Position numbers and translations under genes: made by a program. The notes beneath the pieces were generated by a model that saw only the letters and a list, made by a program, of their open reading frames with translations, searched no databases and was not told the DNA's origin. Shown here in pieces: positions 2,536 to 59,405 of a stretch of DNA of 64,000 bases. Source of the DNA: Squalus acanthias (taxonomy: Eukaryota); contig CM059430.1 of the NCBI GenBank assembly GCA_030390025.1, positions 72,912,001 through 72,976,000 of the forward strand, read 5' to 3'. The first letter of the stretch is position 1; every line of letters starts with the position of its first letter.

Positions 2536-4696
2536 GGAAGTAATGTAAAACCAAGGGTCCAGCGAGAATGAGGAACTGAAAGATATTGTCGGCCAGAAAT
2601 TCGGCTGTTGTCGGATGAGTACGCGCTGTGTACTCACCCGTAAGGCCATCTGAAGTGCCGGTTTCCTGCATGCACTGCGCATGCACGGGAAACCGGAACT
2701 TCTGTTCCGCTGAAGGGAGGGGTTCAGAAGTCGAACACGTGCGCGGGAGATGCTGTGCGCACGCAGCGAACTTCGATTTTTTTTCAGGTTTCTCCGGGAA
2801 GGTAAGTATGAAGAAGCTGCACTTTTAAAAAGGAGGCGCAAGGTCTGTTTTTAACAAGGTAAGTGGTTAATTAATTACAATTTAAACGTTTTTTCAACAG
2901 GTTTATTTTTTTTGATGCTTTAAAGAAAGGTAAGTTTATTTTTAGCACCGTTAAAAAGTATAATTAACTTATTCAAAAATTTAAATTTTTGTTTAAAGTA
3001 GTTAATTTATTTAACTTATAGTTATTTTAAAAATGGGATCATTTTTTCAATTAATTTGAAGTTTAAGTGCGGTTTTGGGGCCGATCTCTATTCATCGATT
3101 TGACAGGTCTTCCTGTCAAATCTATGAATGAAAATGCCCTGCTAGGATTGGCTCTCCATGACCCACAAGTTCCCAGGGGACGCTTCGAACTAACTGAGCT
3201 CCTGGGATACGCAAGCACTGCCCGCCGGCAGCTGGAGGAGGCCCAGGACACGAAGTCCACGTGAGCCCAAAGCACAAGTGGAGGCGGGGTAGGCAAGTAT
3301 GCGCGCGATGCTGGCCCAATAATATTATTGAAAAAGTCGTACTTGAGAAATTAATAAGACTGAACGCAAATAAATCCCCTAGACCTGATGACCTGCTTCC
3401 TCGGGTTTTGAAAGACTTGGCTATAGAGATAATGAATGCATTGGTTGTCATTTTCCAAAATTCCATGATAAGAATTTTGAAATTGAGGCGTTGCTTAAAC
3501 AGGACCCAATGTAGGTCAGCGAGCACAGGGCTGATGGGCGAACAGGACTTGGTGTGATTTAATTAGGCCTCATGGGATTGAGGGTAATATACTAGCATGG
3601 ATTGGGGATTGGTCAACTGAGAGAAAACAGAGAGTAGGAATAAACGGTTCATGTTGAAGGCTGTAAATAGTTGGGTACCACAAGGATCCGTACTTTGCCC
3701 TCAGCTATTCACAATCTCCATCAATGATTTGGATTAGGGTACCAAATGTAATATATGCAAGTTTGCTGATGATACAAAGCCGGGTGGGAATGTAAGTTGT
3801 GTGGAGGATGCAAGGAGGCTTCAAGGGGATATAGATAGGTTAAGTAAATGAGCAAGAACATGGCAAATGGAATATAATGTGGACAAATGTGAAGTTATCC
3901 ACTTTTGTCGGAAAAATAGACAAGCAGAGTATTTTCAAATTTTGAGAGATTGGGAAATGTTTTTTGTTTATGAGGGACATGCGTGTCCTTGTACACGAAT
4001 CGTTGAAAGTTAACATGCAGGTACAGCAAGTAATTAGGAAAGCAAATGTTATGTTGGCCTTTATTACAAGATGATTTGCGTATTAGAGTAAAGACGTCTT
4101 ACTGCAATTATATAGCAGCCTTCTGAGACCACACCTGAAGTATTGCGCACAGTTTGGTCTCCATAACTAAGGATGGATATACTTGCCATAGACTGATGGC
4201 AACAAAGGTTCACCAGAGAGGTTCCTGGGATGGGGGATAGTCCTATGAGGGGAATTTGATTAGAAGTGGCAAATATTCTCTGGAGTTTAGATGAATGAGA
4301 AGTGATCTCATTGAAACATACAAAATTCTTACAAGTCTTCACAGGGTAGATGCAGGGACGATGTTTTCCCTGGCTGGGGAGTCTAGAACTAGGGGTCACA
4401 GACTCAAAATATGGTGTCCGCCATTTAGGACTGAGATGAGGAGAAATTTCTTCACTCAGAGGGTGATGAATCTTTGGAATTCTCTACTCTAGAGGGCTGT
4501 GCAGGCTCTGTCATTCAGTATATTCAAGACAGAGATCTATACGTTTTTGAATATTAAGGGAATCAAGGTATAAGGGTACAGTTCAGGAAAGTGGAAATGA
4601 GGTAGAAGATCAGCCATGATCTTAATGAATGGCGGTGCAGGCAGAAGGGCCAAATGTCCTACTCCTGGTCCTATTTCTTATATTCTTATGTTCTTA
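2536..4696 (+). mobile_element. 5'-truncated CR1 LINE inserted in the Harbinger transposase (unit A)
   Basis: RT fragments (NKSPRPDDLLPRVLK; FRTEMRRNFFTQRV); (ttcttatg)n tail; 7-bp TSD tgcaatc; contains the 2590 MITE and an L2-like remnant at 3466-3556. Confidence 0.92.
2590..3317 (+). mobile_element. Harbinger-related MITE (~730 bp), unit-A specific
   Basis: Ends cggccagaaattc...ctggccc; absent at the homologous CR1 site (~37805); hairpin arms around an AT-rich core. Confidence 0.88.
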
Positions 4697-6299
4697 TGCA
4701 ATCCCTGTTGCCAAGAGCTGCGCCATCACGGTCGCCAAGTTGTGAAGCATGCAGCAGGTTCCCACGAAATGGGACAGCCGCTCAGCTGAGTACTGGAGTG
4801 CTCCTTCCGAGCGGTCATGGCAACGGAACCATTACGACTGAACCCCAATGGTCTGCTCGATAATGTTCCTGGTGGATAAATTACTTTCATTATATGAGTG
4901 TTGGGGAAGTGTGTTGGGGTTGCGGAGGGGATTCATGAGCCAGGTCGAGAGCGGATAGCCCCTGTCAGCGAGCAGCCAGCCGCGAGCTTGTTGTGGTGGC
5001 TGGAAGATTGCTGGCAGACCGGACTGGCGAAGGATGAAGGCATCGTAGCTGCTGCCAAGATTGCGGGCATTGACATTGAGGATTCACTGTGCACATCTTC
5101 TGCACATTTAGTGAGTGGTAGCCTTTGCGGTTATGGAAGCTCTCAGGATTGTTATACATTGCCCACAAAGCCACGTGAGTGCATTCCACGTTGCCGTGCA
5201 CCATGGGGAAGACCGCTGTCCTGGCAAAGCCACATACGCACTTATCCCGCTTCTCAATGCTGAGAGAGATGCCAATATATTCCCTTCTCCTGGTGTAGAG
5301 AGTCTCAGCGATCTCACAGATGCAGCGATGCATGGCAAACTGTGGGATGTTAGCTATATGTCCACCTGCAGACTGGAAGGGTCCACTGGCGAAGAAATTG
5401 AGGGCCACGGTGACATTGACTGCTACTGAGAGAGCCGTGTTCGCTCTGCTCTCAGGCTAAACGCCTGGTTGCAGGAGATGACAGAGTTCTATGATCACTT
5501 CGTTGGTGAAGCATAGCCTCCTAAGAAACTGCTCCTCAATTACTTGGAGGTAGGGACAGTGCTGACGGACGTCCCTAGGTGGGTAACGCCTCCCGTTGAC
5601 AACCTCCTCGTCCTCCCTCTTCACGCATTTTCTTGTTTTCACCGCTGCCTCCGCTTGCCTCTGCTGCAGATCCTGGAGGGCGATGTCGACTGCCAGTACA
5701 GCCGCGTGAATGTGAGCAAGTGTTGTGAGCAGAAGCCTTTGCTAAATAATGAGGGAGTTCTTCACTTGAAACATTACTCCCTATTACAAAATAACCTTGG
5801 AATAATTGAAGAAAGCTGTTGGAATTGCAGGAAGCAGAACACAGCCACTGAAACTGCGAAAAACTGTCAGGTGCAGCTGATTGCTGATGATCCTTTTAAA
5901 TTTCGTTGCTGGAGTTTCCTTCCTGCGCTTCCTGCCATTTAGAAATTCCGGTAAGTTCAATGGCAAGAACGAGTACTGCAGATCAGCCATTAGCTGGCAG
6001 AAGAGTGGACGCAGGCACTTTTTCGACATTTCGCCACGTTAACAGGTGGAGCAAACTACCCGAATTTCTAGGCCGATGCTCCCACGATCATGTTAGTTAG
6101 GTAATTGCATATTTTGGGTGCTGTGATGTTTAGGGTGGTGGATTGGCTGCCGATCAAGAGGACCAGTTTGTCCTTGACACTATAGAGTCTCTTGATCGTT
6201 ATTGCAGCTGTGCATGCAAGTGGAGAGCATGCGCAAACTCTTCTGCCTTACACTTTGGAGGTGCAAATAAGGCTATGGGGAGTCAAGAGTTGAGCTCCT

Positions 6300-11460: not shown

Positions 11461-11659
11461 AGCTGTACTGGAACAGCTTGTCTAGTTGCAGTGCTAGTTC
11501 TAGAGCACCGTCTTCAGCTGCACAGAAGGGACATCTTTGTGAACCACAGATTGAGCTGTGTTAATGCACTCAACGTTTCTTGATATTCCGTGAGGTGAAT
11601 ATAATTGGCTTCAGACAGGCATCTGTGATGTTTGATAGCTGAGGAGGAAGCCGAGAAAT

Positions 11660-12090: not shown

Positions 12091-13440
12091 TGATGTCAAT
12101 GGTGGACTATTCTACAGGGATGAGATTTTGCATTGTGCTGCTTGTTGTGAGCCAGCTTCCCCTGGAAGAAGAGTGGCATTGGAATAATATATATCCTGGG
12201 GAATGAGTTTCAACCCACACTGTGCATTACTCAGCTTACCAATGTGTGCAAGATGACAGGAAAAATTAGATAATTGGGTCAAGAAAGATAATTGCCTGCG
12301 AGGGGCAGCAGCAGCTTTTGCGGGCGTGAGTGCAAGCAAAAGGGAGGTGCAGTAAGGACGTATGGGCAGCTGGGGCAATTGGAGGTGAGATGGATTGAGA
12401 ATGCTGAGATGAATGTAAACCCCTTCATGGCAGTGCAGGAAGTATGAGAGAAATGACGGCGAGCTTTACATTGGCACTTCTGATGAGATCATTAATGCCA
12501 ATAATTACCACGGCTGTTCTGCTGAATGAATGCTGTAACTTCGGTGAAAAACTGAGGAAACCCTGCGGAAATTCTGAACCAAAGTGTCTTTCTGCACTGC
12601 AGCCTGGTCAGGGAGATAATGCTGATCACATTCATGTATGATGCCATCTCTTGTCATGCCCGTATCCCAGGTAGCTTTAGTGCAGGCAGTGGACTTTGGA
12701 AGTGGACGTCCTTCGTATTGAGCATTTGTTCCACCAGCATTTACAGAGCTGTATGTGAACGCCTCTGGACCTTGAGTTGATTTTTCTTAGCTTCAGACAT
12801 CACCCTGAAGCGTCACCGCGTTGTTTCCCTATTTTGGTCAAAAAAGGTGCACCTTCCCATTAAGCTGCTGCAGCACTTAACAGGACTCAGCAGGACATGA
12901 TTTCCCACTTTCTAATCGGCGAATTGCCTGCAGAAAGCGCGCTTCGTGCTGGCAGTTCAGCTCAACCTGCAAATGCGGCACAACAGAAAGCTGAGAATGG
13001 TTTACCGGCTCCTCTTCTCGCTGACTGTTGCTCTCACCCCGCTCACCTTCCCGCCATTGCCTCGAAGTATAATTTGCAATTATACAGCGTCTTTAAAGTA
13101 ACAAAACTTCCCATTGCGCTTCACAGGAGCATAATCAGACAACAAAATTGACTGCGAACCAAAGAAGGAAACATTAGGAGAGGGGACAAAAACCTTGATT
13201 AAAGAGATAGGTTTACGGAGCATTTCAAAGGAGGAGAGAGAGGTAGAGAAGTTTAGTGAGTTAGAGTTGTGTGATTATGCAGCTGAGTGCTTGGCAGACC
13301 ATGTTGGGGCAAGGGTCGTCGGGGTTCCGAAAGAGGCCGGGATTGGAATAATGCAGGTTTCTATGAGAATTGTAGGGCCGGTGAATGTTGCAGAGATTAG
13401 CAGGTGCGTGGCTATGAAGTGATTTGAAACAAAAGATATT

Positions 13441-14489
13441 CGGCCAGAAATTCGGATCTCCGGCTTCCCTCGAGTGCAAGAATCGCGCGCGTACTTTCAT
13501 ACCGCGCCTGCTGTTGTGCTTCGGGCCCACGTGGAATTCTGATCCTGGGCCTCCTGCAGCTGCCAGCACGCAGTCCTTGCATATCCGAGGGGCGTAGTTA
13601 GTTCGAAGCATCCCCTGGAATCACATGGGACATGGAGAGCCAAACGGAGCAGGGATTCTCCATTGAAAGATTTGACAGGAAGACCTGTCAAATCTATGAA
13701 GAGAGATCGGCCCCAAAACCTCACTAAAACTTCAAATAAATAAAAAAAAAATCACATTTTTAAAATAACAATAAATTACATAAATTAACTAATTTAAACA
13801 AAAATTTAAATTTCTGAAAAAATTAATTACTCTTTTTAACGGTGCTAAAAATAAACTTACCTTTCATTAAAGTATGTAAAAAAGAAAACCAGTTGAAAAT
13901 TTTTTTAATTGTGCTTAATTCAGCATTTACCTTGGTAAAAGCAGGCCTGCGTAGCTTCTTCGTACTTACCCTCACGGAGAAACCTGGAAAAAAACGAATT
14001 TCGAGGTCTATGCGCTGCCTCTCCGGCGCAGGCGTTTAACCTCTGAAAACTTGCCTTCAGGGAAACGGAGGTTCCGATTTCCAGCGCATGCGCAGTGCAT
14101 TTAAAACTAATATTTAAATTTTGCAAAATAAATTTAAACATTTTCAAGGGCCAAAAAGAACCTAAACAATGTTTAAAGATCTTAATTTGTTTAAATCATT
14201 TAAAAGATTTATTTTAATATTTATTTAAACACTTACGCTGATAAAAGAAGGCCTTATGCCTGCTTTTAACTGGCATTAGGGTTTCATGGGCATTTGCTGG
14301 GCAGTAGTTGGGCAAATAGTGAATGTCCATTTTCTGCACATTCGGATGATCTGTCAAGCTGAAACTTGACAGATCGCAAGTTCCGGGTTTTCACGCAGGC
14401 GTATCGCATGCAGAAACCTGGAACTTGCAGGGCTTTTATGACTGTGTACGCTGTAGGAACCTTCTCAAAGGCCCTGGAAAATTTGGGCC
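13441..14489 (-). mobile_element. Chimeric MITE: younger copy (13441 to ~14100) fused to the arm of an older copy (~14100-14489)
   Basis: 13441-14100 is the reverse complement of the 2590-type element and is absent in unit B; 14100-14489 matches 45095-45489. Confidence 0.8.
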
Positions 14490-14553
14490 AATAGCTACCT
14501 AAATTTAAAGCAAAAAGGAATACCAAATGAGTTTCCTCTTACATGTTCTATAG

Positions 14554-14700
14554 CTTCCCCAGCTCCGTTACGGATTATTTAGCTGAAGAGAGCTCATCTG
14601 CTCTGACTCTCGTCTGTAAAACGACAGAGTTCTGCCCGGAGTCTCTGACCTTCACTTGGTATGAAGATCAAACGAACATTGTGACTGGGATCAGCACAGA
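14554..14700 (+). pseudogene. Truncated C1-set exon of a second, divergent receptor paralog (unit A)
   Basis: After acceptor ttctatag: SPAPLRII / (frameshift) LAEESSSALTLVCKTTEFCPESLTFTWYEDQTNIVTGIST. Aligns with PPTPLRI...LILVCKTAEFYPNDINITWYKDG...ETGIN of the minus-strand gene; the C-terminal half is missing. Confidence 0.8.
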
Positions 14701-17907: not shown

Positions 17908-18657
17908 GGCCCTGAAATTGCGGATTCTGTGACGGCATACTCTCAGAGTATACCATTGTATTCCTTTTGAAATGCCCCGTAAGTTCCGGATTTCCTCAAG
18001 TGCTTGCATATATCTGGAAATTGAGGCCTGTCAATGTGCACGATGACAGGCCATATGCGGGAAACCCGAAAAAGCAATCGCTGGCGCAGAGTTCAGCAAT
18101 TTACCCAGCGATCGGCCGGCAATTGCCCACTTAGGTCTTACAGTTGATGAAAGCAGGCATGGTCCTGTTTGTATTAGCGTAAGGAGATATCTAACGCTTA
18201 AATTAAACATTTTTAATATCCAAAATTATGCACATACACTGTATTAAATGAATTTATGCAAATATTAGACTGTATTACAGTTTTAAATACAGGTGAAATT
18301 ATCAAAAAATATTTTTTTACCGAGGTTGGTGTAATGAAGGTACTTTTGAAAAAAATTACAAATTTGAACATTGTATGATTATTTGATTTGGGAATTCCAT
18401 TGCATATCATCAGTGGATTCCCTTCGTAAATGATTGGAATTTTATTCTGTTTATGGATTGGAGGACTGGGCCCACATGATCGCAGATACGCTTCCGATGC
18501 GCCTCCATCCTGGGATCTGTTGATTATTACTCTGCCCTCTGCCTCGAGGCCTGAGACCACAACACTTCTCAGTCAGGGCACCAGGAGATACTTTCGTAAT
18601 TGTTTCATGCGTCGGAGGCATACTCCGGAATTATGCTGCTGAATGCATTTTTTAGCC
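17908..18657 (+). mobile_element. Older Harbinger-related MITE, predates the duplication
   Basis: ggccctgaaattgc start with a degraded matching end; subterminal ggcatactc..gagtat dyads; homolog at 49665-50614. Confidence 0.8.
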
Positions 18658-19335: not shown

Positions 19336-19422
19336 TTAACTTATTTCATCCCTACCCTCACATTATCAAGGAAATACTAAAGGACACAATGAAACGGGAC
19401 AATTTCATACCTTTACGTATTT

Positions 19423-20676
19423 GGCCCGAAAATTAAACCTAATACGCGAGAGTACGCACTGTGTACTCTCGCGTATTAGATCCCGAATTGCCGGTTTCCT
19501 GCATGCACTGCAGATGCGCGGGAACAGGCACTTGGTGAATTGAAAAGGGGGCGGTTCCTAAGTGAACCGCGTGCGCACTACAGGCTGTGCGCACGCAGTG
19601 CACTTAGTTTTTTTTTCAGCTTTGAAAGCGCAGGTAAGTGGTGAAGATTTTACACACAAAGAAAGCAGGCGTAGGACCCCCTTTTAACAAGGTAAGTAGT
19701 TAATTAAGTGTTATTTTAAATTTTTTCAACAGGTTTATCATTTTTAGAGACTTTAAAGAAAGGTAAGTTTATTTTTATAACTTTTAATTTTATTTTAAAT
19801 TTTTTCAAAAATTAAATTTTTTGTTTAGAATGGTTAATTTATTTAACTATACTTATTTTATTAATTAGAAGTCGCACAACACCAGGTTATAGTCCAACAG
19901 ATTTATTTAATTTTACAAGCTTTCGGAGCTGTTCGCTCCTTCTTCAGGTAAGGTAGCTGTGAGAGAATCTCCCAGAATTCACTATATAAACACAGGAAAA
20001 ATCTATTCAAATCTTTCCCTACATCAAAGACACACTAAGAGCACAGCCAAGACAATGAGATGTGTCCCAGGGGGTCCAACGTGTCAAAACACATGCTGGC
20101 TGCATATCCTCTCCATTTGTTGTGTTAGTCTTTTTAAAACAAAACCTGGAAAGACCGGCCATGATGTCAAGTCACGTTCTGTATCGTGACATGAACCCGA
20201 TATCGCGATTGAGGCCATCCTCATGAGTGCGGAACTTGGCTATCAGTTTCTGCTCTATGAGTTTGCGCTGTCGTGTATCCCGAAGGCCGCCTTGGAGAAC
20301 GCTTACCCGCAGATCCGAGGCTGAATGCCCCTGACTGCTGAAGTGTTCCCCCTTTTATTAATGTGATGGCTTTTTAAAAATTTAATTGAGGTTTAGCTGT
20401 TCTTTTGGGGTGTGTAGTATTCATAGCTTTGACATCTCTTGCCGTCAAAACTATGAATTAAAGATGGTGTGCTGCCATTGGCTCTAACTGAATCACGTGA
20501 TCCCAGAGCTCGCACGAACTAATTGCGCCTCCGGGTCACGCAAGCACTGCATGGTTCCAACAGAGAGAGCCTTTGAAACTAAAGTTCGTGTGGGCCCGGA
20601 GCAAAAAGGTAGGCACGGAGTGCGATATCGCGGGGAATCCTTACCCCCGCGGGAACCATCCATGTTTAATTTCTGG
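19423..20676 (+). mobile_element. Harbinger-related MITE inserted in the TM exon of the pseudogene
   Basis: ggcccgaaaattaaac...gtttaatttctgg; empty site at ~51375-51385 in unit B; contains a nested Penelope-like fragment. Confidence 0.9.
19866..20352 (-). mobile_element. Penelope-like retroelement 3' fragment nested in a MITE
   Basis: Minus strand encodes ...QKLIAKFRTHEDGLNRDIGFMSRY, resembling a GIY-YIG C-terminus; flanked by the 10-bp duplication ttttattaat (19856-19865 / 20353-20362). Confidence 0.75.
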
Positions 20677-22944
20677 TATTACTGGATATCGCTTCCTCAT
20701 GATTATCAGGAGCAACAGCATTAAGATTGCACCATCCTGCGGATCGATAGACCTGCATGGAGCATTGTGCGTAGCCATCTCCTGTAAAATAAATGTCAAA
20801 AATAAAATTTGAAATTGAACATTTTGAGAAAGTTTTCTGCAGAACCACCTTTCAATGTCGCCTATCATTCTTTTGAACATTTATTTCAATTTCGGGAGTC
20901 ACGCAGCATAAAGAGACGGTTAAACATTTTATTGATCTTCTTATTTTTCCTTTTCCATTTCAAGTCGTTATGATTACTTAACATCTAAAGAGAATTTTAC
21001 TACTGCATTTATAAAATGGAGCACGATTAAACCTCCACCCCTGAGTTATACTCAAGACGATTATCTTTGGACTTTAGGTTTTAGACCACATGTTAACTAG
21101 GAATTAGATATGATAGTTGATTCCTAGATTAGTCACCAATGTTTGGTAAACAAGCTGTGCTGTTTCGAGAATTCAACAGCTTCAGTTTTACTTTTACTAA
21201 GACCAGAATTTTATTTCCAGAATTGTTTAAACTGAAGTTAAATTCTCAAACTACCATGGCGTGATTATCTGTCGAGGCGTCTGGGTTACTATTTCCGTAC
21301 AATAACAATTATATTACATTAACTCAGCTCTCTAATAGAAAACGTTCAGAACAAAGACCCATTCGCCAACAGATCTGGAATAATCTACTTTAATCCATAT
21401 TCTTGTTCCTATGAAGAGTGAAAACCCATCAATGCTCCTTTAAAGGATTGTGGACAAAATTGTGCACATGCCAAATACGGTCCATAATCTTTGGTATCCG
21501 TCTTGGGTCAAATGTTCCTTGCATTTGTTATAATTAGATTTTTACCTACAGTACTGGTTGAAATGAGTCGGAAGTCAGTTGCCGTTTGGACGGTGTGATG
21601 AAATGCCTGGCAGGTATAAATAGTCCCGCTCTTGACAGGCTGTGACTCTTCGAAAAAGCTGGAAACTTCATACAGACCTTTTTCATTTATCTGTAATTGT
21701 GGCGTTTATCCCGGTCTCAACTTTCAAACCATCCTTGTACCAAGTAATATTGATATCATTTGGGTAAAATTCAGCAGTTTTACACACAAGAATCAAAGAA
21801 GCAGATGCATTACGATCAGCCTCATTGCAGTCAATACGCAGTGGGGTTGGGGGAAATGTGGAACAAGATATAGAAGAGATTAGAACTGACTGACCTCTTT
21901 CAGAATGTATGAAGGAGTTCTATTTTCTACCAGATTAAAGTCAATGTGACATTAATACTTTCAAAACATTAAATGGCATGTTCTTTTATAGAAACGTTGG
22001 GTGGATTTTCAACTTGCTTTCTGGGCGGGAAACAGACGATGTTGATCGGCAACTTGGCATCAAGTTGAAAAGCTCTCCCATTAATTAAAGGATTACAATT
22101 TCTACTGAGACATTGGTGAGCTAAACAGGATACCGACGAGATCAATGCTAGAAAGAATATAGATGGAAGATATAAAGGTTTGGAGGATTTTGAGATTATT
22201 GCAACATATATATCTCAATAATTAAGAGCTGGTAGAAAGGGATTCGATGGAGAATATGTTTACAACGCTTCGCATTTTACAGGGCTAAGCCTTTAATTGA
22301 AAAATAGATCATTTCACGATCAAATTGTTTTAATGTTGTTTATAAAATCATATTGAACACCATTCACCTAAACCGGAATATTTTAGAAAGTTGACAGACG
22401 GTTTAAAAACTGTCGAGACAGTTTTACTGAGTTAGAGACTCTTTTGAAGTAATTATTGTGAAGAGTGTTGGAAAGGTTAATGTAAAATACAGATAACACG
22501 TATTTTTAGAACGGCAGTAAGTGAAGAACCATAGGTGGAAGAAACGCAAAGCAGAAGAAAATAGATCAAATGGAAAGTTACTGAGAACTCGCCGTAGAGT
22601 TCCCCGAAGTTTAAGCTAGAGTGCATTAGAGAGAGACGTAACGGTTCGAAAGCAACAATTAATTTGCCATCTAAGGGATAAGCTTATCCGTCATATTCTC
22701 ATTCAAGCGGCAGACTTCCATTTCCTATCCGACTACCTGGATGGTTCACTCCGCAGCAATAAACTCCAGAGTCCGCGGAGCTGACATTCAGGAGCTGAAG
22801 TGAGGACTCTCCTTTCTTCAAAGAAAAAAATCGTTTTCTGCTGTCATTAACTGACTGTAGAAACTCATTTTCTCCCAGTTTCCACCAGTAAACAGTCACA
22901 TCGGAATTATCTTGTAAAAAAGGGAACGCGCAATAGAAAGTAGT

Positions 22945-23686
22945 GGGCCAAAAATTGATCCCGCTGCGCGAGAGTACGCACTGCGTGCTCTCGCGTATTC
23001 TCTCTCCAATTGCCGGTTTTCTGCATGCACTGCGCATGCGCTGAAAACCGGCACTTGGTCTTTGGAAAAGGGGGCGGTTCCTCGGTGCACCGCGTGCGCG
23101 CTACAGGCTGCGCGCACGCTGTGCACTAAGTGCTTTGGACGCGCAGGTAAGGACAGAGGATTTTAGAAACGAAAAAAGGAGGAGTAAGACCCACTTTTAA
23201 CAAGGTAAGTAGTGAATTAAGTATTATATTGAATTTTTTTTAACAGGTATATCTTTTTTAGAGACTTTAAAGACAGGTAAGTTTATTTTTATAACTTTTT
23301 AAAAGATTTTAAATTTTTTCAAAAATTAAATTTTTTATTTAAAATGGTTAATTTATTTAACTATACTTATTTTATTAACGTGATGTTTTTTTTTTTATTT
23401 AATTGAGGATTAGCTGTTATTTTGGGGGTGTGTAAGATTCATAGCTTTCACAGCACGTATGTGAAACTTATGAATGGAAGATGGTGTGCTGCCATTGGCT
23501 CTAACTGAGTCACGTGATCCCACAGCTCGCACGAATTCACTACGCCGGTGGGATACGCAAGCACTGCCCAGCTGATGTCTAGAACATCAAGTTCGTGCGA
23601 GCTGGATCTGAAAAAGCCAACGCGGAGTGAGAGATCGCGCCTGCTCCTTACCCCTGCGGGAACAGAGCGAGATCAATTTCTGGGCC
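22945..23686 (+). mobile_element. Harbinger-related MITE (742 bp) inserted in the V exon of the pseudogene
   Basis: TIRs gggccaaaaattgatc / gatcaatttctgggcc; flanks agt / act versus empty-site aat at 54281-54283. Confidence 0.93.
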
Positions 23687-29361: not shown

Positions 29362-30129
29362 AGCCCTGAAATTGCGATCTCCCTGACAGCGTACTCTCAG
29401 CATACGTCGTCATGATCCTTTTGAAAGCTCCCGCAATTTCTGAGTTTCTGCAGGTGTTTGCACATATGTGAAATCCGGAACTTGCGATCTTTCAATGTAA
29501 GGCTTGACATGTCATTCGAACCGCATTTTAAATCAGTTTTGCAGGCGAAGGGTTGTACTATTTGCCAAACAACTGCCCACAAATTGCCCAGGAAGCTCTT
29601 ATAGCTTGTAAAATCAGGCATACGGCCAGCTTTCATCAGTTTAACGATATTCGTGAGCCATAAGTTAAACATTTAGAACTCAAAAATGATTCACATACAC
29701 GTTAAATTAGTTTCTGCAAATATTGGCCCGGATTAAGATGATTAACATTATTTATAGATTTTTTTTTTATTGAGTTTAGTGCAATGAAGGGACTTTTGAA
29801 TAAAATTGAAATTCAATGCATTTATAATCATTAGCATTCTGTAAATTATATAATTATTTGGGGATTTAATTTCGTATCATTAGGGGATTCCCTTTATACA
29901 TGGTTGCAAAGGAATCCTCCTTTGTGATTGAGGGACTGGGCCGATGTGATCCCAGTTAACATTTGGAACTGCCTGCGTCCATGGAATCCGTGGACCGTTC
30001 TGTTGCCGTACAGCTATAGTCAGGGCCTCGCAACTCTACACAGCCTGACCGCCTGGAGATAGGCTCGTAAAGGCTTTCCAATTTGGAGGCGTACTCCGGA
30101 GTTACACCTCCGACCGCCATTTCCAGTTC
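29362..30129 (+). mobile_element. Older Harbinger-related MITE nested in a CR1
   Basis: agccctgaaattgcg...cgccatttccagttc; same motif order as the 17908 copy. Confidence 0.8.
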
Positions 30130-30580
30130 ATCAATGTGTTTTCTGCCATTTTGCTATCGCTACCTATGATGTTATCATTCCATCCATTAGTGGCCCTACT
30201 CCCACCGGACTTTCCTTTTTTTATTTATGTGCCTGTAAATTATTTTGCTATTTTGTTTCATGTTACATAATACTTTAATTTCATAGATCTTCCTTGCCTT
30301 CCTGACTGATTTTTTTCACTTCTCTCCAAATCTCTTTGCATTTACACTTATCATGCTTTAAATTGCTCCGTTTTACTTATTGTACGTTTATTTCCTTGGC
30401 CACAATTCTTCTCTGGTGTCTTTATGAATCCATTGTGTTTCATCAGTATTTAGATTTTTTTTTAGCGGAATGTATTTTTACTGGATTCTGCTGAACACCG
30501 TTTTAAATGTTTCACATTGTCGTTCGACATTGCTTGTTAATATTGCTTTCGATTTTATTATTCCCAAGTTCGAGTCTCAA

Positions 30581-43200: not shown

Positions 43201-44489
43201 ATGTATAACTCAGCTTACGAATGTGTGCACGATGACAGGAAGAATTAGATAATTAGGGCAAGAAAGAGAAGTGGCTGCGAGGGCAGCAGAATCTTTTGCG
43301 GGCGTGAGGGTAAGCAAAAGGGAGGTGCAGTAAGTTCTTATGGGCAGCTATGGCAATTGGGGGTGAGATGGATTAAGAATGCTGAGATGTATGTAAACCC
43401 CTTCATGGTAGTGCAGAACGTATGAGAGAAATGACGGCGAGCTTTACATTGGCACTTCTGATGAGATCATCAATGCCAGTAATTACCACGCCTGTTTGGC
43501 TGAATGAATGCTGTAACTTCGGTGAAAAACTGAGGAAACCCTGCGGAAATTCTAAAGCAACGTGTCTTTCTGCACTGCAGCCTGGTCCGGGAGATAATGT
43601 TGATCACCTTAATATATGATGCCATCTCTTGTCATGCCCATATCACAGGAAGCTTTAGTGCAGGCAGTGGACCTTTGGAAGTGGACGTTCTTCGTATTGA
43701 GAATCTGTTCCACCAGCATTTACAGAGCTATATGTGAACGCCTCTGGACCATGAATTGATTCTTCTTAGCTTCAGAGATCACCCTGAAGCGTCACCGCGT
43801 TGTTTCCCTGTTTTGGTCAAAAGATGCACCTCCCCATTAAGCTCCTGCAGCACTTAACAGCACTCAGCAGCACATGATTTCCCACTTTCTAATCGGCGAA
43901 TTGCCTACAGAAAGCGCATGTCGTGCTGGCAGTCCAGCTCAACCTGCAAATGCGGGACAACAGAGAAGCTGGGAATGGTTTACCGGCTCCTCTTCTCGCT
44001 GGCTGTTATTCTCACCCCGCTCACCTTCTCGCTATTGCCTCGAAGTACTACTTGCAATTATACCGCGTCTTTAAAGTAACAAAACTTCCCATTGCGCTTC
44101 ACAGGAGCGTACTCAGACAACGAAATTGACTAGGGAACCAAGGAAGGAAACATTAGTAGAGGGGACTAAACCCTTGATGAAAGAGGTAGGATTACGGAGC
44201 ATTTTAAAGGAGGAGAGAGAGGAAGAGAGGTGGAGAAGTTTAGGCGGAAAATGCCAGAGTTTTGGGATTTTACAGTTGAGGATACGGCAGACCATGGTGG
44301 GGCGAATGTAATCGGGGATCCGAAAGAGTCCGGAATTTGAATAATGCAGGTTTCTATGAGAAATGTAGGGCCGGAAATGTTGCAGAGATTAGCAGGGGCG
44401 TGGCTATGGACCGATTTGAAACCAAAGATAAGAATTTTAAATTGTCGAACGAGGAGAGCAAAACCGACATCATTGTTTCACAGGAGACA

Positions 44490-45489
44490 ACAATATTTGT
44501 ACGGAAACCCCATAAGCATGAATGGGAATACCCCCAAAAAATACACCTAGACATCAACTTGAAAAAGCCATCGCATATTTAAAATGAATTAAAATGTCAT
44601 TAATTAAATATTTAAAGCAAAAACGTATTTGTTTGTTAAATACATTTACAAGTTTTAAAGGGGCAAAAGTTTTTAAATGTATAAATTAATGATAACATTT
44701 TATTTTCTGTTTTTTAAACCTCTTACGCTGTTCAAAGCAGGTCTTGTGTATGCTTTTGCCAGGCGTAAGAATTTCACAGGCAGTCGCTGGGCAGAAGTTC
44801 GGCAAATCACCGCCCATGAATGCAGTTTTCCCGGGGATTTGGAGGATCATGACAGATCGCAATTTGCAGATTCCAGCGCATGCCTAAACCTGGAACTTGC
44901 GCTGCCAAGATGGTTGCATACACACCTCGTACGCAACCTTAGGGGCCTCAAATTACGTACCATTATGCTTCTGGGGATTCCATTTACGTACGGAATCCCC
45001 TTAAGCACAATAGGAATCCCCTAAAAAACAGACTTCCATAGCAGTTAAGAAAAAATCACATGGTCAAAATTAATTAAAATACAATTTAATTAAACATTTA
45101 AAACACATATTTAATTTTTTGAAAAATTAATTTACACATTTTCCAAGTGGCCAAAAATAACTTAACCAATGTTTAAAGGTCTTTATTTGTCAAAATAATT
45201 TTAAAACATTTATTTTAATATTTATTTAAATCCTTACGCTGGCAAAATAAGGCCTTATGCCTGCTTTTACCTGGCGTAAGGATTTAATGGGCATTCGCTG
45301 GGCAGTAGTTGAGCAATTAGTGAATGTCCATTTTCCGCACATGCGGATGATCTGCCAAACTGAAACTTGACAGATTGCAAGTTCCGGTTTTCACGCAGGC
45401 GTATTGCATGCAGAAACCTGGAACTTGCAGGGCACTTACGACTGCGTACGCTGTACGTACCTGGTCATGGGCCCTGGAAAATCTGGGCC
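44490..45489 (-). mobile_element. Two tandem MITE fragments of the older subfamily
   Basis: Arm motifs (ttacgctg..aaagcagg..tgctttt..ggcgtaag; gacagat..gcatgc..aaacctggaacttgc) occur at 44720-44900 and again at 45230-45430; end aaatctgggcc. Confidence 0.7.
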
Positions 45490-45553
45490 AATAGCGTCCT
45501 AAATTTAAAGCACAAAGGAATTCCGAATTAGTTCCCTCTAACATGTTTTATAG

Positions 45554-47709: not shown

Positions 47710-50700
47710 CTATAAAGCGAGTGTTAAAGAATATCATTAGTACATGGCCGTTTGTTCAGTTGTGAAAGGAGACATTACATTTAAGAAAGTCAACAGCTTT
47801 AAATAAGATAAGCAAAATAATATATTTACTCCGTCACAATGGGTGACCTGTGTGTTTCTTTCAGCCTACCTGGGCGTACACAGACCTCTCCTCTTGATAC
47901 TTAGCGCTTGCAGTTTTCGTTGACTTGGTCAAATCTAATGCAGTGTAAAGCACCATCTCATTTGCTGATCCCTGCATAGATCACAAAGTAATGCATATTA
48001 TATTGTTTACTCATTATTTTAGTGACACTGCAGTGTATGGATTACACGTTGAACCGAACGGTCTGTAATTCTAAAACCCGAGCTGGAATGTGAAGCATTG
48101 GACAAAAAATACGGAACTTGCCGGGTGAGTACGCGCTGTGTACTCACCCGTAAGGCCTGCTGAAGTGCCGGTTTCCTGCATGCACTGCGCATGCGCGGCA
48201 ACCCGGATCTTCCGGTCTCGTGAAGGGAGAGCTTGAGAGGTGAACCGCTTGAGCGGTAGAGGCTGCGCGCACGCAGCTAACTTAGGTTTTTTTTTTGCGT
48301 TTCTCCGGGAGGGTAAGTATTGAAGAGGCTGCATTTTTAAAAAGGATGCGCAAGACCCGTTTTCAACAAGTTAAGTGGTTAATTAATTACAATATAAAAA
48401 TTTTTCCAACAGGTTAATCTTTTTTAGATACTTTAAAGAAAGGTAAGTTTATTTTTAGCACTGTTAAAAAGTATTTTAACTTTTTCAAAAATTTAAATTT
48501 TGTTTAAAGTAGCTAATTTATTTAACATATAGTTATTTAAAAAATGTGATTGTTTTTTTAAAATGTATTTGAAGTTTAGGTGTTGTTTTGGGGCCGATTT
48601 CGGGGTCTTCCTGTCAAATCTATGAATTAAAGCTGGTCTGCTGTCATTGGCTCTCCATGTCCCACGTGATCCCAGGGAATGCATCGCACTAACTACGCCC
48701 CTGGGATACACAAGCACTGCGCGCTGGCAGTTGGGGGAGGCCCAGGAGCCGAAGTCCCCGTGGGCCCAGAGGTCAACGGCAGGCGCGGTAGGTAGGTGCG
48801 CGTGGGATCCTTGCACCCACGGTAAGCCAGGGTGCCTAATTTCTGGGCCATTATAATAAATCCACATGGAGCTTTTGTTATCTGTCAATAATTTTATACT
48901 GTATCATTAGGACACTGTATTATATTTTACTCTTGCAATGTGGACTATAGTCATGTTATAAATTATGGTTGTTACACAAGTTACTGCTTAGTAAGCCCCA
49001 TGTGTGAAAGCACAAAGGCCTAAGATACCTAAATTACTTGAGGTGTTTTCCCCTTACATGTGCACGTGTGTTTGTAAATTACATTGTATTTTATTATTAC
49101 TGATTCCATTAACATTATATATTTTGGAAACAATTTCAATAATATATGAACAAACGCAGTAAATACCTTTAGGAGATACATTTAATTTAGAATTGTCTCG
49201 CTGAAATCTTAAATAAATATTTACTCAGAATTTTAAATGGCTAATGATTTCCCTTAAGTAGCGAAGTGATGTATTTCAGGCCAGCGGATTAACTGCATCT
49301 ATGAAAGTATTTCGTGCTTAATCTGACTACCAATTTCTATTTCCATAACAAATGGATGAAAATAACCTACCAGACCTTCGGGATGTGAGGGTTGCTCCAT
49401 CGAATCCCCTGTTCCTGGTAATGAATGGACTTGAAAATTTGAAGATTAATTATTTGCTTATATCGCACTCCATGATTCAAAAACCATTTCATGTAGACTT
49501 AATACACAGTCCAAACTTATGTTCAGTAACACAATCAAGAAATTGTTGGATATCTCTATTTGTTCAAGCTTTACTGTTAAATTACCATCTCCAGATTATG
49601 TTAATTATTTGAATCCTACTGAAGTCAAGTTCCACGGGGTCAAGAGGCTTCCTGCTTTGGCCATGGCCCTGAAATTGCGTTGTCTGTGAAGGCATACTCT
49701 CAGAGTACACCATTGTATTCCTTTTGAAATGCCCCGTAAATTCCGGATTTCCTCATGAGCTTATCTAAAATCTGGAATTTAAGAACTGTCAATGTACACG
49801 TTGATAGGCCATATGTGGGAAATCCGAAAAAGCAATCCATGGCAGATTTCAGCTAGTTACCCAGCGACTGGCCAGCAACTTTATCGCCGGTCCTTTATTG
49901 TCGCTGGTTCAAAATCCTGCAAATCCCTACCGAACAGCACTGGGGAGTGCCTTCAAAACACGGACTGCAGCGGTTCAAGAAGGAGGCTCACCACCACCTT
50001 CTCAAGCGCAATTACAGATGGGCAATAAATGCTCGCCTTGCCAGCGATGCCCACATCACATAAAAACTAATTAAAAACATTGCCCACATAGGTCTTACAG
50101 TTGTTGCATGCAGGCGTAGGGCCCGTTTGCATCAGCGTAAGGAGATAGCTAAGGCTGAAAATAAACATTTTTCATATCCAAAATTATGCACATACACTGT
50201 ATTAAATGAGTTTATTCAAATATTAGACTGCATTACAGTTTTAAATACGTATATAATTAACAAAAAATAATGTTTTTACCGAGGTTGGTGTAATGAAGCT
50301 AGTTTTGAATAAAATTCCATCTTTGTACATTGTATGGTTATTAGATTTGGGAATTCCATTGCATATCATTAGGGGATTCCGTTCTAAATTATTGGAAAGT
50401 AATTCTATTTATGTATTGGAGGACTGGACCCACGTGATCCTAGATAAGCTTCAGATCCGCCTGTATTTAGGGATCTGTGGACCATTACGCTGCACTCCGC
50501 CTCGAGGCCTGCGATCACAACTTTTCGCAGCCTGGGCACCTGGAGGTACTTTCGTAATTGTTTCATGGGTTGGAGGCATACCGTGCAATTATGCTTCTGA
50601 CGGCAATTTTAGCCTGTTACTTGACGGTAAAGCACACCACTTTAGACACTGCTCTCAACTCACTTCCACAAAAGTATTGCACCAGCAGAAAGAGGTCAGA

Positions 50701-56215: not shown

Positions 56216-57084
56216 CCTCTGATGGTTTGGAAATACTGGCTTATACCGAACATGATTCGAACTGAGAGAGATGACGCATGAGTCTAAAACTGCCCTCAGT
56301 AACGGAATTTATTTTAAGCGTTAAGATCCGTGCCCGCGGTTGTGCGTTCATGATGGACTGTAACTTGAACACAGTATTTAATCTGAAAGGCTGTAGTAGC
56401 AGAAAATATATCTTTAAAGAATTAGATCAAACTTTTGGAGAAATTATTTAGCTCGACATCTACTGTTGTTGCGAAAGTTTATGGACTCCAACAAAGTCAA
56501 CACGACTGGCCGATATCACACTGCGCCATGCGCAATAAGTACATGCAACTAACTTTAAGCCAAAATGATGGCAAACCGCCATCACTACAGCGGACGGCGC
56601 CCTCAGACTTGCACCTCCATTGCAATACACATAAAGAGCGCAACTTATACTGCCGGCTCTGCTTGGCATTGCGTACAATGAACGTAGAAATTTGTGAGTT
56701 TGTGTTTGGCGTTTTCCATCTGCCTGTTTAACAGCTGAAGAATAATTTGAGCGTCATGTCTCACTCATTTAACAATAATTCAGACAATATGCTTCATAAA
56801 ACAGCCGTTGATCAAATTCAGCGTGTAGACCAGAACCACCAATGTAAGAAAGATAATAACATGCAGAACGAGTTTGTACTATTCAGACATTTTATGAGAA
56901 CGATCCAGTGCACACTGAAAGAATAACTATGAAGGTGGTTAGAATTAATCTGCAGTTCAACTGAAACCATCTATTTGGTTTTGCATATATATTGAGGCAA
57001 TGTTTAGAATAATTGCAGCTAATAACCATAAGTTTGCCTAGATATTATTATGTTGCAATCAAAAGACGCTGTTTAGTGCTAGAA

Positions 57085-57295
57085 CTGCCTACACGGAAAT
57101 GTACCAATCAACCATTTCCGTTCTTTACCCCGAGACAGCAATCCGTTTATGACTTAGTCTATCAAATAGAGCAGAAACCGCATTTCAGGTGATGCCGAAA
57201 AGGTCATCTGCTTTTTGATCAATGTATGAACGGCCAGAGTGTAAGCGCATTTTAAAAGGATACGTGTGAGTGGAAACCACAGTTTAACCTTGTGA
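57085..57295. promoter_or_regulatory. Candidate haematopoietic enhancer ~0.9-1.1 kb upstream of the receptor ATG
   Basis: Cluster of ETS (cggaaat, atttccg), RUNX (aaccgca, aaccaca) and E-box (caggtg, catctg) motifs, all also present at ~26480-26680. Motif-level evidence only. Confidence 0.35.
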
Positions 57296-58663
57296 CTATT
57301 GCCGATGAATTGTTTCACGATCTTAACCAGTTACCTTGTTAACCTACATAACGGGTTGTAATATCGTGTTGCTAATGTTAAAGTGCATCAAAGATCAGCA
57401 GACGAACAACTACCATCTTTTCTTTGTATTGATCAACATTAAACAATCTGTACTTTATGCAACAACCTTCTTCATAAAGCGCGGGATCATCCCCACGAGG
57501 CAGCATGTTTGAGATACAAGAGTTCATTACCGGTCTCACAACATTTTAATTGATTAATCATTGAAATTAAGATACTAATCTGTCTGGCCACAGATTTCTC
57601 TGTTTTAAGATAAACTATGTGATTATTCTATACCTACTTCGATGCTAGATAGATCAAAATCCTTTGAAAATGTCTATTATAAAAAAAGTCATAATAATAG
57701 TTGAAAGTAATTTTAAATATCTGTCATGCCAGCAATATAATAATGTATTATGCATTGAAAGGGGTTTTGCATTTTTAGCAGCCTTGCATATTTAGAGATC
57801 ATTTTCATCGATTTGAAATTAGCTGTTTGGATCAAAACGTAAAGTTCACTAACAAACAATGGGCGTTGGAGCGGAAACAAAGAAGAAGAAGATTACAGCT
57901 TTTAGGCTCAGTTTGGGAACATGGTAAAGGAAATGTTGCAAGAACAAAGTTGGAAGTAGACTGCTATAGAAATATAGGGCCGTATATTCCGTTCGGATGC
58001 TTCCCGTAGATGGAATCCCCCGACCTGCAAAAAAGTATCGCACCGACTATAATCCTCTGAGCCCACGTAAATTTCCGATTTAATCCTGAGGAGTCCTGGG
58101 CAGCGTAGGACGTCACGTCGCCCAGGAGCGCAGCGTGTGCGCAGCCGAGGGCTTCGAGTGTAGGGGAGACCCGCCCAGAAAAGTTATATTTGCATAGTCC
58201 ACGCCCCCGATTTTTTTCAACACTTCAAAAGCTTTGGAAATTGAAAGTAGCTGCAAAATTTAATGGTAAGTTGTTTCTTTATAGTTTTTTGAATCTTTTG
58301 TAAACTTTTAGAAACTTTTAAAGACTTTTACGTGGATTTGAAGTATCTTAAAGAGCTTTCAAGAGTTTTGAAGCAATTTAAAATGTTTTAAAAGTCCTGC
58401 CAATATTTATTTCATTTATTTTAATTAATCAGCTAAGTGAAATGGAAGGACTGAGCACAATTCGAATGAATAAGAGAGCTCAGAATTTCAGTGACGATGA
58501 CATCAGCACACACCTCAATGAGGTTGAGACAAAGCGCCCGCGGATCCTTGGAGGAATGAGAAGTCCAGGGTGCCGCGCAAAGGACAGATGACAGCTTGGT
58601 CAGAAGTTGCCCAGGCTGTCAGTGCGAACTCCACCATTCCACAGACAGCGGAGCAAAGACATT

Positions 58664-59405
58664 GGGCCAAAAATTCATCCCGCGACGCGAGAGTACGCAC
58701 TGCGTACTCTCGCGTATTGTCTCTCCAATTGCCGGTTTTCTGCATGCCCTGCGCATGCGCTGAAAACCGGCACTTGGTCTTTTGAAAAGGGGGCGGTTCC
58801 TCGGTGCATCACGTGCGCGCTACAGGCTGCACGCACGCTGTGCACTTCGTGCTTTGGACGCGCAGGTAAGTACGGAAGATTTTAGAAATGGAAAAAGGAG
58901 GAGTAAGACCCACTTTTAACAAGGTAAGTAGTGAATTAAGTATTTTTTTGAATTTTTTTTAATAGGTATATCTTTTTTAGAGACTTTAAAGACAGGTAAG
59001 TTTATTTTTATAACTTTTTAAAAGATTTTAAATTTTTTCAAAAATTAAATTTTTTATTTAAAATGGTTAATTTATTTAACTATACTTATTTTATTAATGT
59101 GATGGTTTTTTTAAAATTTAATTGAGGTTTAGCTGTTATTTTGGGGGATGTAAGATTCATAGATTTCACCGCACGTAGTGAAACTTATGAATGGAAGATG
59201 GTGTGCTGCCATTGGCTCTAACTGAGTCACGTGATCCCACAGCTCGCACGAATTCACTACGCCGGTGGGATACGCAAGCACTGCCCAGCTGATGTCTGGA
59301 ACATCAAGTTCGTGCGAGCTGGATCTGAAAAAGCACAAGCGGAGTGAGAGAGTCCGCGGGGAAGCCTTACCCCCGCGGGAACAGAGCGAGATCAATTTCT
59401 GGGCC
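58664..59405 (+). mobile_element. Harbinger-related MITE (742 bp) nested in the Myb ORF of the autonomous-type element
   Basis: TIRs gggccaaaaattcatc / gatcaatttctgggcc; TSD ATT/ATT; near-identical to 22945-23686. Confidence 0.93.

What the first reader, a model, noticed from the sequence alone, without database searches (positions are those of the whole stretch)
2590..59405. Harbinger MITE family whose internal hairpins show compensatory base changes: a candidate structured RNA/ssDNA element
Seen: about a dozen copies from several diverged subfamilies share a ~730-770 bp length and one layout: TIR, GC-rich hairpin arm, AT-rich core, hairpin, GC-rich arm, TIR. Stems stay paired while their sequence changes. 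Stem 1 is cgGgTgagtac-N7-gtactcAcCcg (48122-48150) versus cgCgAgagtac-N7-gtactcTcGcg (58686-58714), i.e. two compensatory pairs. The post-core stem is attcat.gatttGac...gtCaaatctatgaat (3090-3129) versus attcatagatttCac...gtGaaacttatgaat (59155-59192). In older copies an unrelated stem occupies the same position (ggggattcc...ggaatcc at ~29883 and ~44973). Stem 2 varies among ccggtttcc/ggaaaccgg and ccggttttc/gaaaaccgg around a TGCGCATGC loop. Known: Harbinger Myb proteins bind short subterminal palindromes, and MITE interiors are usually unconstrained. Inference: covariation hundreds of bases inside the element suggests selection on fold (a structured transcript or cruciform DNA), which I do not recognise as described for Harbinger.
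Basis: partly seen in the sequence, partly recalled or inferred. Interest (0 to 1): 0.85.

Follow-up and report, generated by a model that had tools for sequence, protein, structure and literature searches.

The report
Palindrome-rich Harbinger MITE family
Short non-coding copies of a Harbinger jumping gene carry rows of small DNA palindromes inherited from the parent element's control region; they look more like protein-binding sites than a new structured RNA.

Summary
The sequence facts hold. The window has about 12 pieces of one Harbinger non-autonomous family: 4 intact or nearly intact copies of 729-750 bp, the rest truncated or old.

The dyads exceed chance, mainly in the left arm. There, 17 of 50 pairs changed on both sides, against a shuffle mean of 10.8. 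Fold z-scores run from -3.7 to -7.1 on both strands. In the right arm, which holds the cited post-core stem, covariation does not exceed shuffles.

A structured RNA is not supported:
- Wobble mismatches show no strand bias (G:T 24, A:C 26).
- Rfam gives no hit.
- Stems in inserted copies decay as fast as non-stems.
- No expression data could be obtained.

The left arm is the transposase-side end of a decayed autonomous Harbinger in the same window. The dyads have short cores conserved across lineages, and one dyad brackets a perfect NRF1 consensus.

Best reading: these are palindromic DNA sites of the parent's end and promoter, kept only in active lineages. Template-switch palindrome correction is a serious rival.

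The scan noted the same idea on another piece of this genome (s1-947197, unchecked). Interest is modest.

The parts
48100..48849 (+). Subfamily A copy, intact, 750 bp. The 3-bp flanks are ATT/ATT. Dyads: H1 48122-48150; H2 about 48168-48206, imperfect in this copy; H5 48669-48707. The left arm of H4 is deleted.
2590..3318 (+). Subfamily A copy lacking about 40 bp of the 3' end. Dyads: H1 with one mismatch at 2616-2636; H2 2658-2696; H4 3090-3129; H5 3171-3207.
13441..14100 (-). Older A-like copy without its 5' end. H1 and the left half of H2 are absent. H4 is a 12-bp perfect stem at 13668-13695.
14300..14498 (-). Left-arm fragment of the old O lineage. It has the same 5' flank as the O copy at 45497.
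17908..18500 (+). Old R-lineage copy. The H1-position dyad at 17934-17954 uses the same core motif in the opposite arrangement. The H2b dyad is 9 bp and perfect.
19421..20679 (+). B-like copy (19421-19865 plus 20353-20679) split by a 487-bp unrelated insertion in the AT-rich core. H1 is B-type and H4 is A-type.
22945..23686 (+). Subfamily B copy, 742 bp, 94% identical to the copy at 58664. The flanks AGT/ACT differ by one base.
29365..30130 (+). Old R-lineage copy with the GGGGATTCC...GGAATCC dyad near 29883.
44450..45497 (-). Two old copies end to end: O at 45497-45018 and O2 at 44970-44450. A 9-bp dyad lies at their junction, about 44973-45000.
50079..50609 (+). Old, weakly similar R-lineage piece. 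It shares 66% identity with 29583-30122.
58664..59405 (+). Subfamily B copy, intact, 742 bp, flanks ATT/ATT, inserted in the Myb-side gene of the autonomous element. Dyads: H1 58685-58715; H2 58730-58772; H4 59155-59192; H5 59234-59271; H6 59354-59378.
57977..62158 (+). Decayed autonomous Harbinger, flanks ATA/ATA. DDE_Tnp_4 transposase pieces lie on the minus strand at 60189-61176. The transposase-side end (62158 down to 61734) is homologous to the MITE left arm and part of the core. It carries H2 (18 bp perfect, 62042-62100) and H2b (11 bp perfect, 62017-62044). A Myb-side dyad lies at 58094-58127.

Best explanation
The copies are internal-deletion derivatives of a two-gene PIF/Harbinger transposon. 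Their left GC-rich arm is the parent's transposase-side end: the terminal inverted repeat plus about 200 bp of subterminal and promoter sequence, up to the first 5' splice-site-like GTAAGT. The AT-rich core is a remnant of the sequence that follows. The right arm is, on weaker evidence, the Myb-side end.

The dyads are double-stranded DNA palindromes of those ends, not folds of a transcript. Each has a short core that is conserved in sequence across lineages. The GAGTAC motif pair lies 26-48 nt from the terminus. CCGGTTT...AAACCGG brackets a perfect NRF1 consensus. CTGTCAA/TTGACAG forms the third. The outer stem positions drift and are re-matched.

I infer that they are sites for proteins that bind as dimers or pairs. 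Candidates are the element's own Myb-like/transposase complex and host factors such as NRF1. These would assemble the ends and/or control the transposase promoter. Pairing is kept only in lineages that are still transposing. Once inserted, copies decay neutrally.

Shown: the homology to the parent, the dyad excess, the compensatory changes, the conserved cores and the neutral decay. Inferred: protein binding and its role.
For: - The autonomous element has a DDE_Tnp_4 transposase (E 4.8e-10 and 1.7e-13).
- Its transposase-side end matches MITE profile positions 35-451 (E 1.9e-30) and shows 75% identity over 136 bp.
- H2 and H2b are perfect 18-bp and 11-bp stems in the parent.
- The left-arm dyad excess appears in all of A, B, O and the parent, on both strands.
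- Core motifs are concentrated in the family. RWGAGTAY: 12 of 16 window matches lie in family pieces that make up 17% of the window (2.8 expected), all at the H1 position. CTGTCAA: 11 of 20 (3.5 expected).
- All 4 of 4 perfect GCGCATGCGC decamers in the window lie inside H2 of family copies; 0 are expected.
- NRF1 binds as a homodimer to GC-rich promoters (PMC10810270, listing and start of abstract).
- The same core occurs head-to-head in A and B but tail-to-tail in the R lineage. CTGTCAA...TTGACAG (H2b) recurs as TTGACAG...CTGTCAA (H4).
- The Harbinger3_DR Myb-like protein binds a 9-bp subterminal motif (passage in PMC9710019).
- There is no strand asymmetry, and inserted copies decay neutrally.
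Against: - No binding data exist.
- The dyads of one element have unrelated sequences, so several different proteins would be needed.
- I found no significant similarity between the 5' and 3' subterminal regions beyond the terminal repeat (z mostly below 2).
- The most recurrent 8-mers barely exceed shuffles: for the parent, 6 occurrences, reached by 2 of 60 shuffles; the others are not significant.
- Outer stem positions change while pairing is kept. Sequence-specific binding alone does not predict that.
- Only about 5-6 independent lineages were available, all from one 64-kb window.
- The match of the right arm to the Myb-side end is weak (E 5.4e-4).
Confidence: 0.45

Rival explanations
1. 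The dyads are a mutational by-product. Intrastrand template switching (quasi-palindrome correction) during replication, or during the gap repair that follows excision, repeatedly creates, extends and re-perfects inverted repeats in actively transposing lineages. No selection on the dyads themselves is needed.
For: - In the parent, the outer H1 left arm is B-like and the right arm is A-like, giving a C.C mismatch. A and B each became paired by changing a different side.
- Dyad partners shift between lineages. The H1 core pairs upstream in A and B and downstream in R. The CCTGGG arm pairs upstream in the MITE and downstream in the parent's Myb-side end.
- Most swaps are G:C to C:G transversions, not CpG transitions.
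- Published work says template switching can create and maintain hairpins and homogenise inverted repeats at promoters (PMC8794818 and PMC13100816, listing and start of abstracts only).
Against: - Inserted copies show no in-place correction: stems decay like non-stems.
- The same short cores and dyad positions persist across lineages that are 40-60% diverged elsewhere. A purely mutational process does not predict that.
- GC-matched control sequence in the same window shows no such dyad load.
Confidence: 0.25
2. The fold itself is the function. It could be an RNA structure in a transcript of the element, such as a 5' UTR or a small-RNA precursor. It could also be extruded cruciform or single-stranded DNA recognised by shape during transposition.
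For: - Pairing is kept while outer stem sequence changes: 17 of 50 left-arm pairs.
- RNAalifold recovers H1 and a long H2 on its own.
- H1, H2 and H4 have loops of 3-7 nt, which is compatible with cruciform extrusion.
Against: - G:T 24 versus A:C 26 among non-Watson-Crick cells.
- z-scores are alike on both strands.
- The RNAalifold covariation term is +2.01.
- Rfam gives 0 hits.
- Stems are not protected in inserted copies.
- Arrangement flips and partner shifts do not fit a conserved fold.
- By inference from the NRF1 site and the first splice-donor-like site, H1 and most of H2 would lie upstream of the element's own transcription start.
- No RNA evidence is available.
Confidence: 0.15
3. 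The finding is chance plus ascertainment. GC- and CpG-rich arms throw up many short palindromes, and the reader picked those that happened to line up.
For: - Right-arm covariation is not above shuffles: 6 versus 4.2, reached by 91 of 500.
- Each cited right-arm swap is a single event shared by two near-identical copies.
- Recurrent motifs are mostly not significant.
Against: - The stem excess over dinucleotide shuffles appears in every intact copy.
- Left-arm z-scores lie beyond all 50 controls.
- Left-arm covariation is reached by 0 of 500 shuffles, and 79.8% of cells are paired against 27-48% when partners are slid.
Confidence: 0.1

Closest known systems
Non-autonomous PIF/Harbinger elements (Tourist-like MITEs; Harbinger3N_DR in zebrafish, mPing in rice)
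   Same: - Short and non-coding, with terminal inverted repeats and 3-bp target duplications.
- Derived from and mobilised by a two-gene parent (transposase plus Myb-like protein).
- The Myb-like protein binds a short motif in the subterminal regions or terminal repeats (passages in PMC9710019 and PMC2836001).
   Different: - The duplications here are ATT or ATA. I recall TWA as the usual form, from no call.
- The copies are longer, about 745 bp.
- They keep about 200 bp of promoter-like sequence at each end and an AT-rich intron-like core.
- The serial dyads with compensatory changes are not mentioned in the passages I read.
- The primary paper (Sinzelle 2008) was not held.
Harbinger-N12A_XT MITE of Xenopus tropicalis
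   Same: A vertebrate Harbinger MITE reported to contain internal repeats 'of palindromic nature' and NRF-family motif enrichment (passages in PMC12676858).
   Different: It is 342 bp long and was studied as an enhancer source. The passages read report no covariation or dyad conservation across lineages.
Subterminal repeat arrays of other cut-and-paste transposons (En/Spm TnpA 12-bp motifs, Ac/Ds hexamers)
   Same: Short protein-binding motifs occur in direct and inverted orientation within a few hundred bp of the ends, including inverted pairs. This is recalled knowledge, from no call.
   Different: Those arrays repeat a single motif many times. Here each dyad has its own core, and recurrence of any one motif is weak.
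Hairpins made and maintained by template-switch mutations
   Same: Perfect stems and apparent compensatory substitutions arise in single events, and inverted repeats at promoters become homogenised (PMC8794818 and PMC13100816, starts of abstracts).
   Different: That is a mutational mechanism, not a family. The conserved cores and positions across lineages seen here suggest something more than mutation.

Membership tests
PIF/Harbinger superfamily (for the parent at 57977-62158) | Transposase with the DDE_Tnp_4 domain | tested here: met
   Two minus-strand ORF pieces match PF13359 (E 4.8e-10 and 1.7e-13, above the curated cut-off). The gene is split and the element is decayed.
PIF/Harbinger superfamily (for the parent at 57977-62158) | [quoted passage not shown] | tested here: inconclusive
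   A plus-strand reading frame from 58442 is frameshifted and interrupted by the MITE. Its two short pieces (42 and 32 aa) gave 0 Pfam hits. The pieces are too short to decide.
PIF/Harbinger superfamily | 3-bp target-site duplication and terminal inverted repeats | tested here: met
   Of 4 elements with both ends intact, 3 have identical 3-bp flanks: ATT/ATT at 48100-48849, ATT/ATT at 58664-59405, and ATA/ATA at 57977-62158. The fourth has AGT/ACT. Ends read GGGCC...GGGCC, with imperfect 12-19 bp inverted repeats. The flank sequence is not the TWA that I recall as usual.
MITE / non-autonomous derivative | Short, with no transposase, and with ends homologous to an autonomous element | tested here: met
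   Intact or nearly intact copies are 729-750 bp. The left arm and core match the parent's transposase-side end (E 1.9e-30). The right arm matches the Myb-side end weakly (E 5.4e-4).
Structured RNA family | Match to a described RNA family | tested here: not met
   Rfam at gathering score on the whole window gives 0 matches. At E up to 1 on 48050-48900 it also gives 0.
Structured RNA family | Covariation beyond relatedness, with strand-specific G:U tolerance | tested here: inconclusive
   Left-arm covariation exceeds column shuffles and slid controls, but there are only about 5 lineages. The RNAalifold covariation term is +2.01. G:T 24 versus A:C 26 shows no asymmetry. The right arm is not above shuffles.
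Structured RNA family | A discrete transcript that contains the stems | not testable with these tools
   The run search listed 8 small-share contig runs, none on record as RNA.
NRF1-type promoter element | Consensus palindrome GCGCATGCGC | tested here: met
   There are 4 perfect matches in the window, all inside H2 of family copies, against 0 expected. Of the 6 A and B copies that have this region, 4 are perfect. Binding and promoter activity were not tested.

The most novel reading that the evidence does not exclude
The transposase-side end of this Harbinger lineage needs a row of DNA dyads as shapes, that is, extruded hairpins or cruciforms with a short sequence-specific tip. These would serve end recognition or self-regulation. 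Stems could then change sequence freely as long as they stay paired. That would be a structure-based cis-requirement not described for PIF/Harbinger elements.
Probability: 0.15. Interest if true: 0.6.

Novelty: new member of a known kind. Interest (0 to 1): 0.3.

Why it matters
If the dyads are binding sites, this family gives a natural mutagenesis series: several lineages, with conserved cores and flipped arrangements. That series could map what a vertebrate Harbinger needs in cis, which is known for only one reconstructed element.

The family also spreads perfect NRF1 sites, other promoter-like motifs and consensus splice-donor-like sites through the genome. That could matter for nearby genes.

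As it stands, this is a well-behaved transposon family with an unusually palindrome-rich end. It is not evidence for a new RNA class.

Tried and rejected
- Shared motif at both ends. I eyeballed a resemblance between the H1 and H6 regions within each lineage. Local alignment of the 5' and 3' subterminal 60 nt, direct and inverted, within and between lineages, gave z mostly below 2. I dropped the idea.
- One recurrent binding motif. The most recurrent 8-mer with up to 1 mismatch occurs 6 times in the parent (2 of 60 shuffles reach that), and 5-6 times in the MITEs, which is not significant.
- CpG-decay explanation of the compensatory changes. I rejected it because the swaps are mostly G:C to C:G or A:T to T:A transversions outside CpG.
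- Constraint on the AT-rich core. It is more alike between A and B (74-84%) than the arms are (38-76%). Low complexity and fast CpG decay of the arms could explain this, so I made no claim.
- More copies from outside the window. A 29-nt pattern scan of metagenome contigs found 0 matches. No eukaryotic genome collection, Repbase or Dfam is on hand, so I could not check whether the family is already described.
- An empty site for the nested MITE. There is no second autonomous copy in the window.
- Literature. Sinzelle 2008 is not held. Searches turned up no paper on compensatory dyads in Harbinger ends. That covers only the held library. Supplements were not seen; PMC12676858 Figure S1 may bear on the palindromic repeats.

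Full report
**What is there**

A self-comparison of the window with the two cited copies found full-length relatives at 2597-3315, 22944-23687, 48090-48860 and 58660-59410. It also found a 5'-truncated copy on the minus strand at 13436-14100, a copy split by an insertion (19421-19865 plus 20353-20676), and weaker pieces at 45016-45460 and 61991-62125. A profile built from five copies confirmed these and added pieces at 14332-14498 and 44450-44970. Three older relatives lie at about 17908-18500, 29365-30130 and 50079-50609. That makes about a dozen pieces, but only four are intact or nearly so (750, 742, 742 and 729 bp).

**The parent is in the window**

The sequence from 57977 to 62158 is a decayed autonomous element.
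- It has GGGCC ends and ATA on both flanks.
- Two minus-strand ORF pieces match the DDE_Tnp_4 transposase domain (E 4.8e-10 and 1.7e-13).
- A frameshifted plus-strand frame from 58442 is interrupted by the B copy at 58664-59405. Its short pieces gave no Pfam hit.

The transposase-side end, read inward from 62158, matches MITE profile positions 35-451 (E 1.9e-30; alignment). The Myb-side end matches positions 632-814 only weakly (E 5.4e-4).

The MITEs are therefore internal-deletion derivatives that keep both ends of a two-gene Harbinger. Three of the four elements with both ends intact have identical 3-bp flanks: ATT, ATT and ATA. The fourth has AGT/ACT.

**Are the dyads real?**

Yes. Perfect stems of 7 bp or more with loops of 3-30 nt number 11, 5, 5, 9 and 7 in five copies. 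Dinucleotide shuffles average 1.3-1.7 per copy. No shuffle in 300 reaches the observed count for three copies, and the fractions are 0.017 and 0.023 for the other two.

The parent's transposase-side end has a perfect 18-bp stem (H2) and a perfect 11-bp stem (H2b). Its Myb-side end is unremarkable: 1 stem against 0.95 expected.

Left-arm minimum free energies lie 3.7 to 7.1 standard deviations below shuffles in A, B, O and the parent, on both strands. Right arms range from +0.1 to -3.5. Fifty GC-matched control windows from the rest of the window average -0.42 (sd 1.24, minimum -3.97), and none reaches -4. The old R and O2 copies give 0 to -3.5.

**Are the compensatory changes real?**

I aligned nine left arms and supplied four helices totalling 50 pairs.
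- 79.8% of cells are paired, against 27-48% when partners are slid by 1-3 columns.
- 17 pairs have a change on both sides. The shuffle mean is 10.8, and 0 of 500 shuffles reach 17.
- H2 alone has 9 such pairs.

The structure was derived from these same sequences, and only about five lineages are independent. These numbers are therefore supportive, not a probability.

On seven right arms (H4, H5 and H6, 35 pairs), 6 pairs changed on both sides against 4.2 expected, and 91 of 500 shuffles reach that. The cited post-core swap and the H5 swap are each one G:C to C:G event, shared by the two B copies that are 94% identical.

The covariation claim therefore holds for the subterminal left arm. It is not established for the stems hundreds of bases inside the element.

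**RNA or DNA?**

- Among the non-Watson-Crick cells of the left-arm helices, 24 are G:T and 26 are A:C. Neither strand shows wobble tolerance.
- z-scores are equally strong on both strands.
Its covariation term is +2.01, which is unfavourable.
- Rfam gives nothing, either at gathering score on the whole window or at E up to 1 on one A copy.
- Within subfamilies, stems diverge as fast as non-stems: B pair 12/169 versus 22/315; A pair 47/170 versus 69/299; O pair 13/90 versus 7/94. Inserted copies are therefore not under selection for the fold. Whatever keeps the dyads acts only in the transposing lineage.

Expression could not be tested. The run search returned eight small-share contig runs, none on record as RNA.

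**What the dyads look like up close**

Each left-arm dyad has a core that is conserved in sequence across lineages.
- The pattern RWGAGTAY occurs 16 times in the window. Twelve matches lie in family pieces, where 2.8 are expected, and all are at the H1 position in A, B, R and the parent.
- CCGGTTT...AAACCGG is invariant or nearly so in all eight sequences that have it.
- CTGTCAA occurs 20 times, 11 of them in family pieces (3.5 expected). It lies at H2b in O, R and the parent, and at H4 in A.
- Between lineages, stems differ less than non-stems: 26-44% against 39-62%.

The arrangement is not fixed. In A and B the two H1 motif copies face each other across a 3-7 nt loop. In R_17880 they point apart around the same centre, 37 nt from the terminus. 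H2b reads CTGTCAA...TTGACAG, and H4 reads TTGACAG...CTGTCAA.

In the parent, the outer H1 left arm is B-like and the right arm is A-like, leaving a C.C mismatch. A and B each restored pairing on a different side.

H2 encloses a perfect GCGCATGCGC in 4 of the 6 A and B copies that have this region. These are the only 4 matches in the window, against 0 expected. That decamer is the NRF1 consensus, and NRF1 binds GC-rich promoters as a homodimer (PMC10810270, listing and start of abstract).

**Reading**

Three observations point to double-stranded DNA sites read by proteins that bind in pairs: conserved cores, flexible arrangement and no strand bias. These sites would sit in the end and promoter region of the transposase gene, and the MITEs would have inherited them. 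For the one Harbinger studied, the Myb-like protein binds a 9-bp subterminal motif (passage in PMC9710019; see also PMC2836001).

Against this reading:
- The dyads of one element are unrelated in sequence.
- I could not show a motif shared by both ends.
- I could not show a clearly recurrent motif.

The re-matching of outer stem positions and the partner shifts are what template-switch correction would produce (PMC8794818 and PMC13100816, starts of abstracts). That rival could act alone or on top of selection. A fold read as a shape, as RNA or as cruciform DNA, is not excluded but has no positive support here.

**Prior art and novelty**

Internal palindromic repeats have been noted in a Xenopus Harbinger MITE (passage in PMC12676858). 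My searches of the held library found no paper on compensatory dyads in Harbinger ends. I could not consult Dfam, Repbase, the primary Harbinger3_DR paper or any supplements.

The scan itself noted the same idea on another piece of this genome (s1-947197, unchecked).

I file this as a new member of a known kind, with a palindrome-rich transposase-side end that deserves a genome-wide test.

Noticed in passing
window 48310-48460, 2795-2940, 58865-59000 and the same columns of the other copies: On the plus strand of the element, the AT-rich core carries three consensus 5' splice-site-like AG|GTAAGT motifs. Pyrimidine-rich tracts ending in AG follow them. The first aligns with CAG|GTACGT in the parent's transposase-side end, so the core looks like a remnant of the parent's 5' UTR intron region.
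   Followed up: partly
window 48627-48700 and 59200-59270: The right arm keeps promoter-like motifs between the A and B lineages: CCATTGGCTCT (CCAAT-box-like) and CACGTGATCCCA (E-box-like). The parent's Myb-side end has ATTTGCAT (octamer-like) and GC boxes ahead of a GTAAGT site at 58267. The motif names are recalled, not tested.
   Followed up: no
window 58661-58663 and 59406-59408: The B copy is inserted in the Myb-side reading frame of the autonomous element, with ATT duplicated. The parent copy is therefore dead for at least two reasons: the frameshift and this insertion.
   Followed up: partly
window 45484-45520 and 14485-14530 (minus strand): The two O-lineage copies share about 25 bp of identical 5' flank outside the terminal repeat. 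Either they sit in the same larger repeat or they inserted at the same site of it. Other notes on this genome mention Harbinger site-specific insertion.
   Followed up: no
window 19866-20352: An unrelated 487-bp insertion in the AT-rich core of the B-like copy is flanked by a duplication of about 10 bp. It has no other copy in the window and is probably a retroposon-type insertion.
   Followed up: partly
window 44955-45020: The O and O2 copies lie head to tail, with a 9-bp dyad (GGGGATTCC...GGAATCCCC) at the junction. That dyad resembles sequence near the Myb-side terminus of the autonomous element (58005-58022).
   Followed up: partly
window 48100-48849: The intact A copy lies inside the span that another note (s1-888290) assigns to a V(J)-C1 receptor gene, near its 5' end. 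I did not examine whether it supplies promoter or exon sequence to that gene.
   Followed up: no
window 48344-48591 versus 23190-23420: The AT-rich core is more alike between subfamilies A and B (74-84% per 50 columns) than the GC-rich arms are (38-76%). Low complexity, CpG decay of the arms, or exchange between subfamilies could each explain this.
   Followed up: partly
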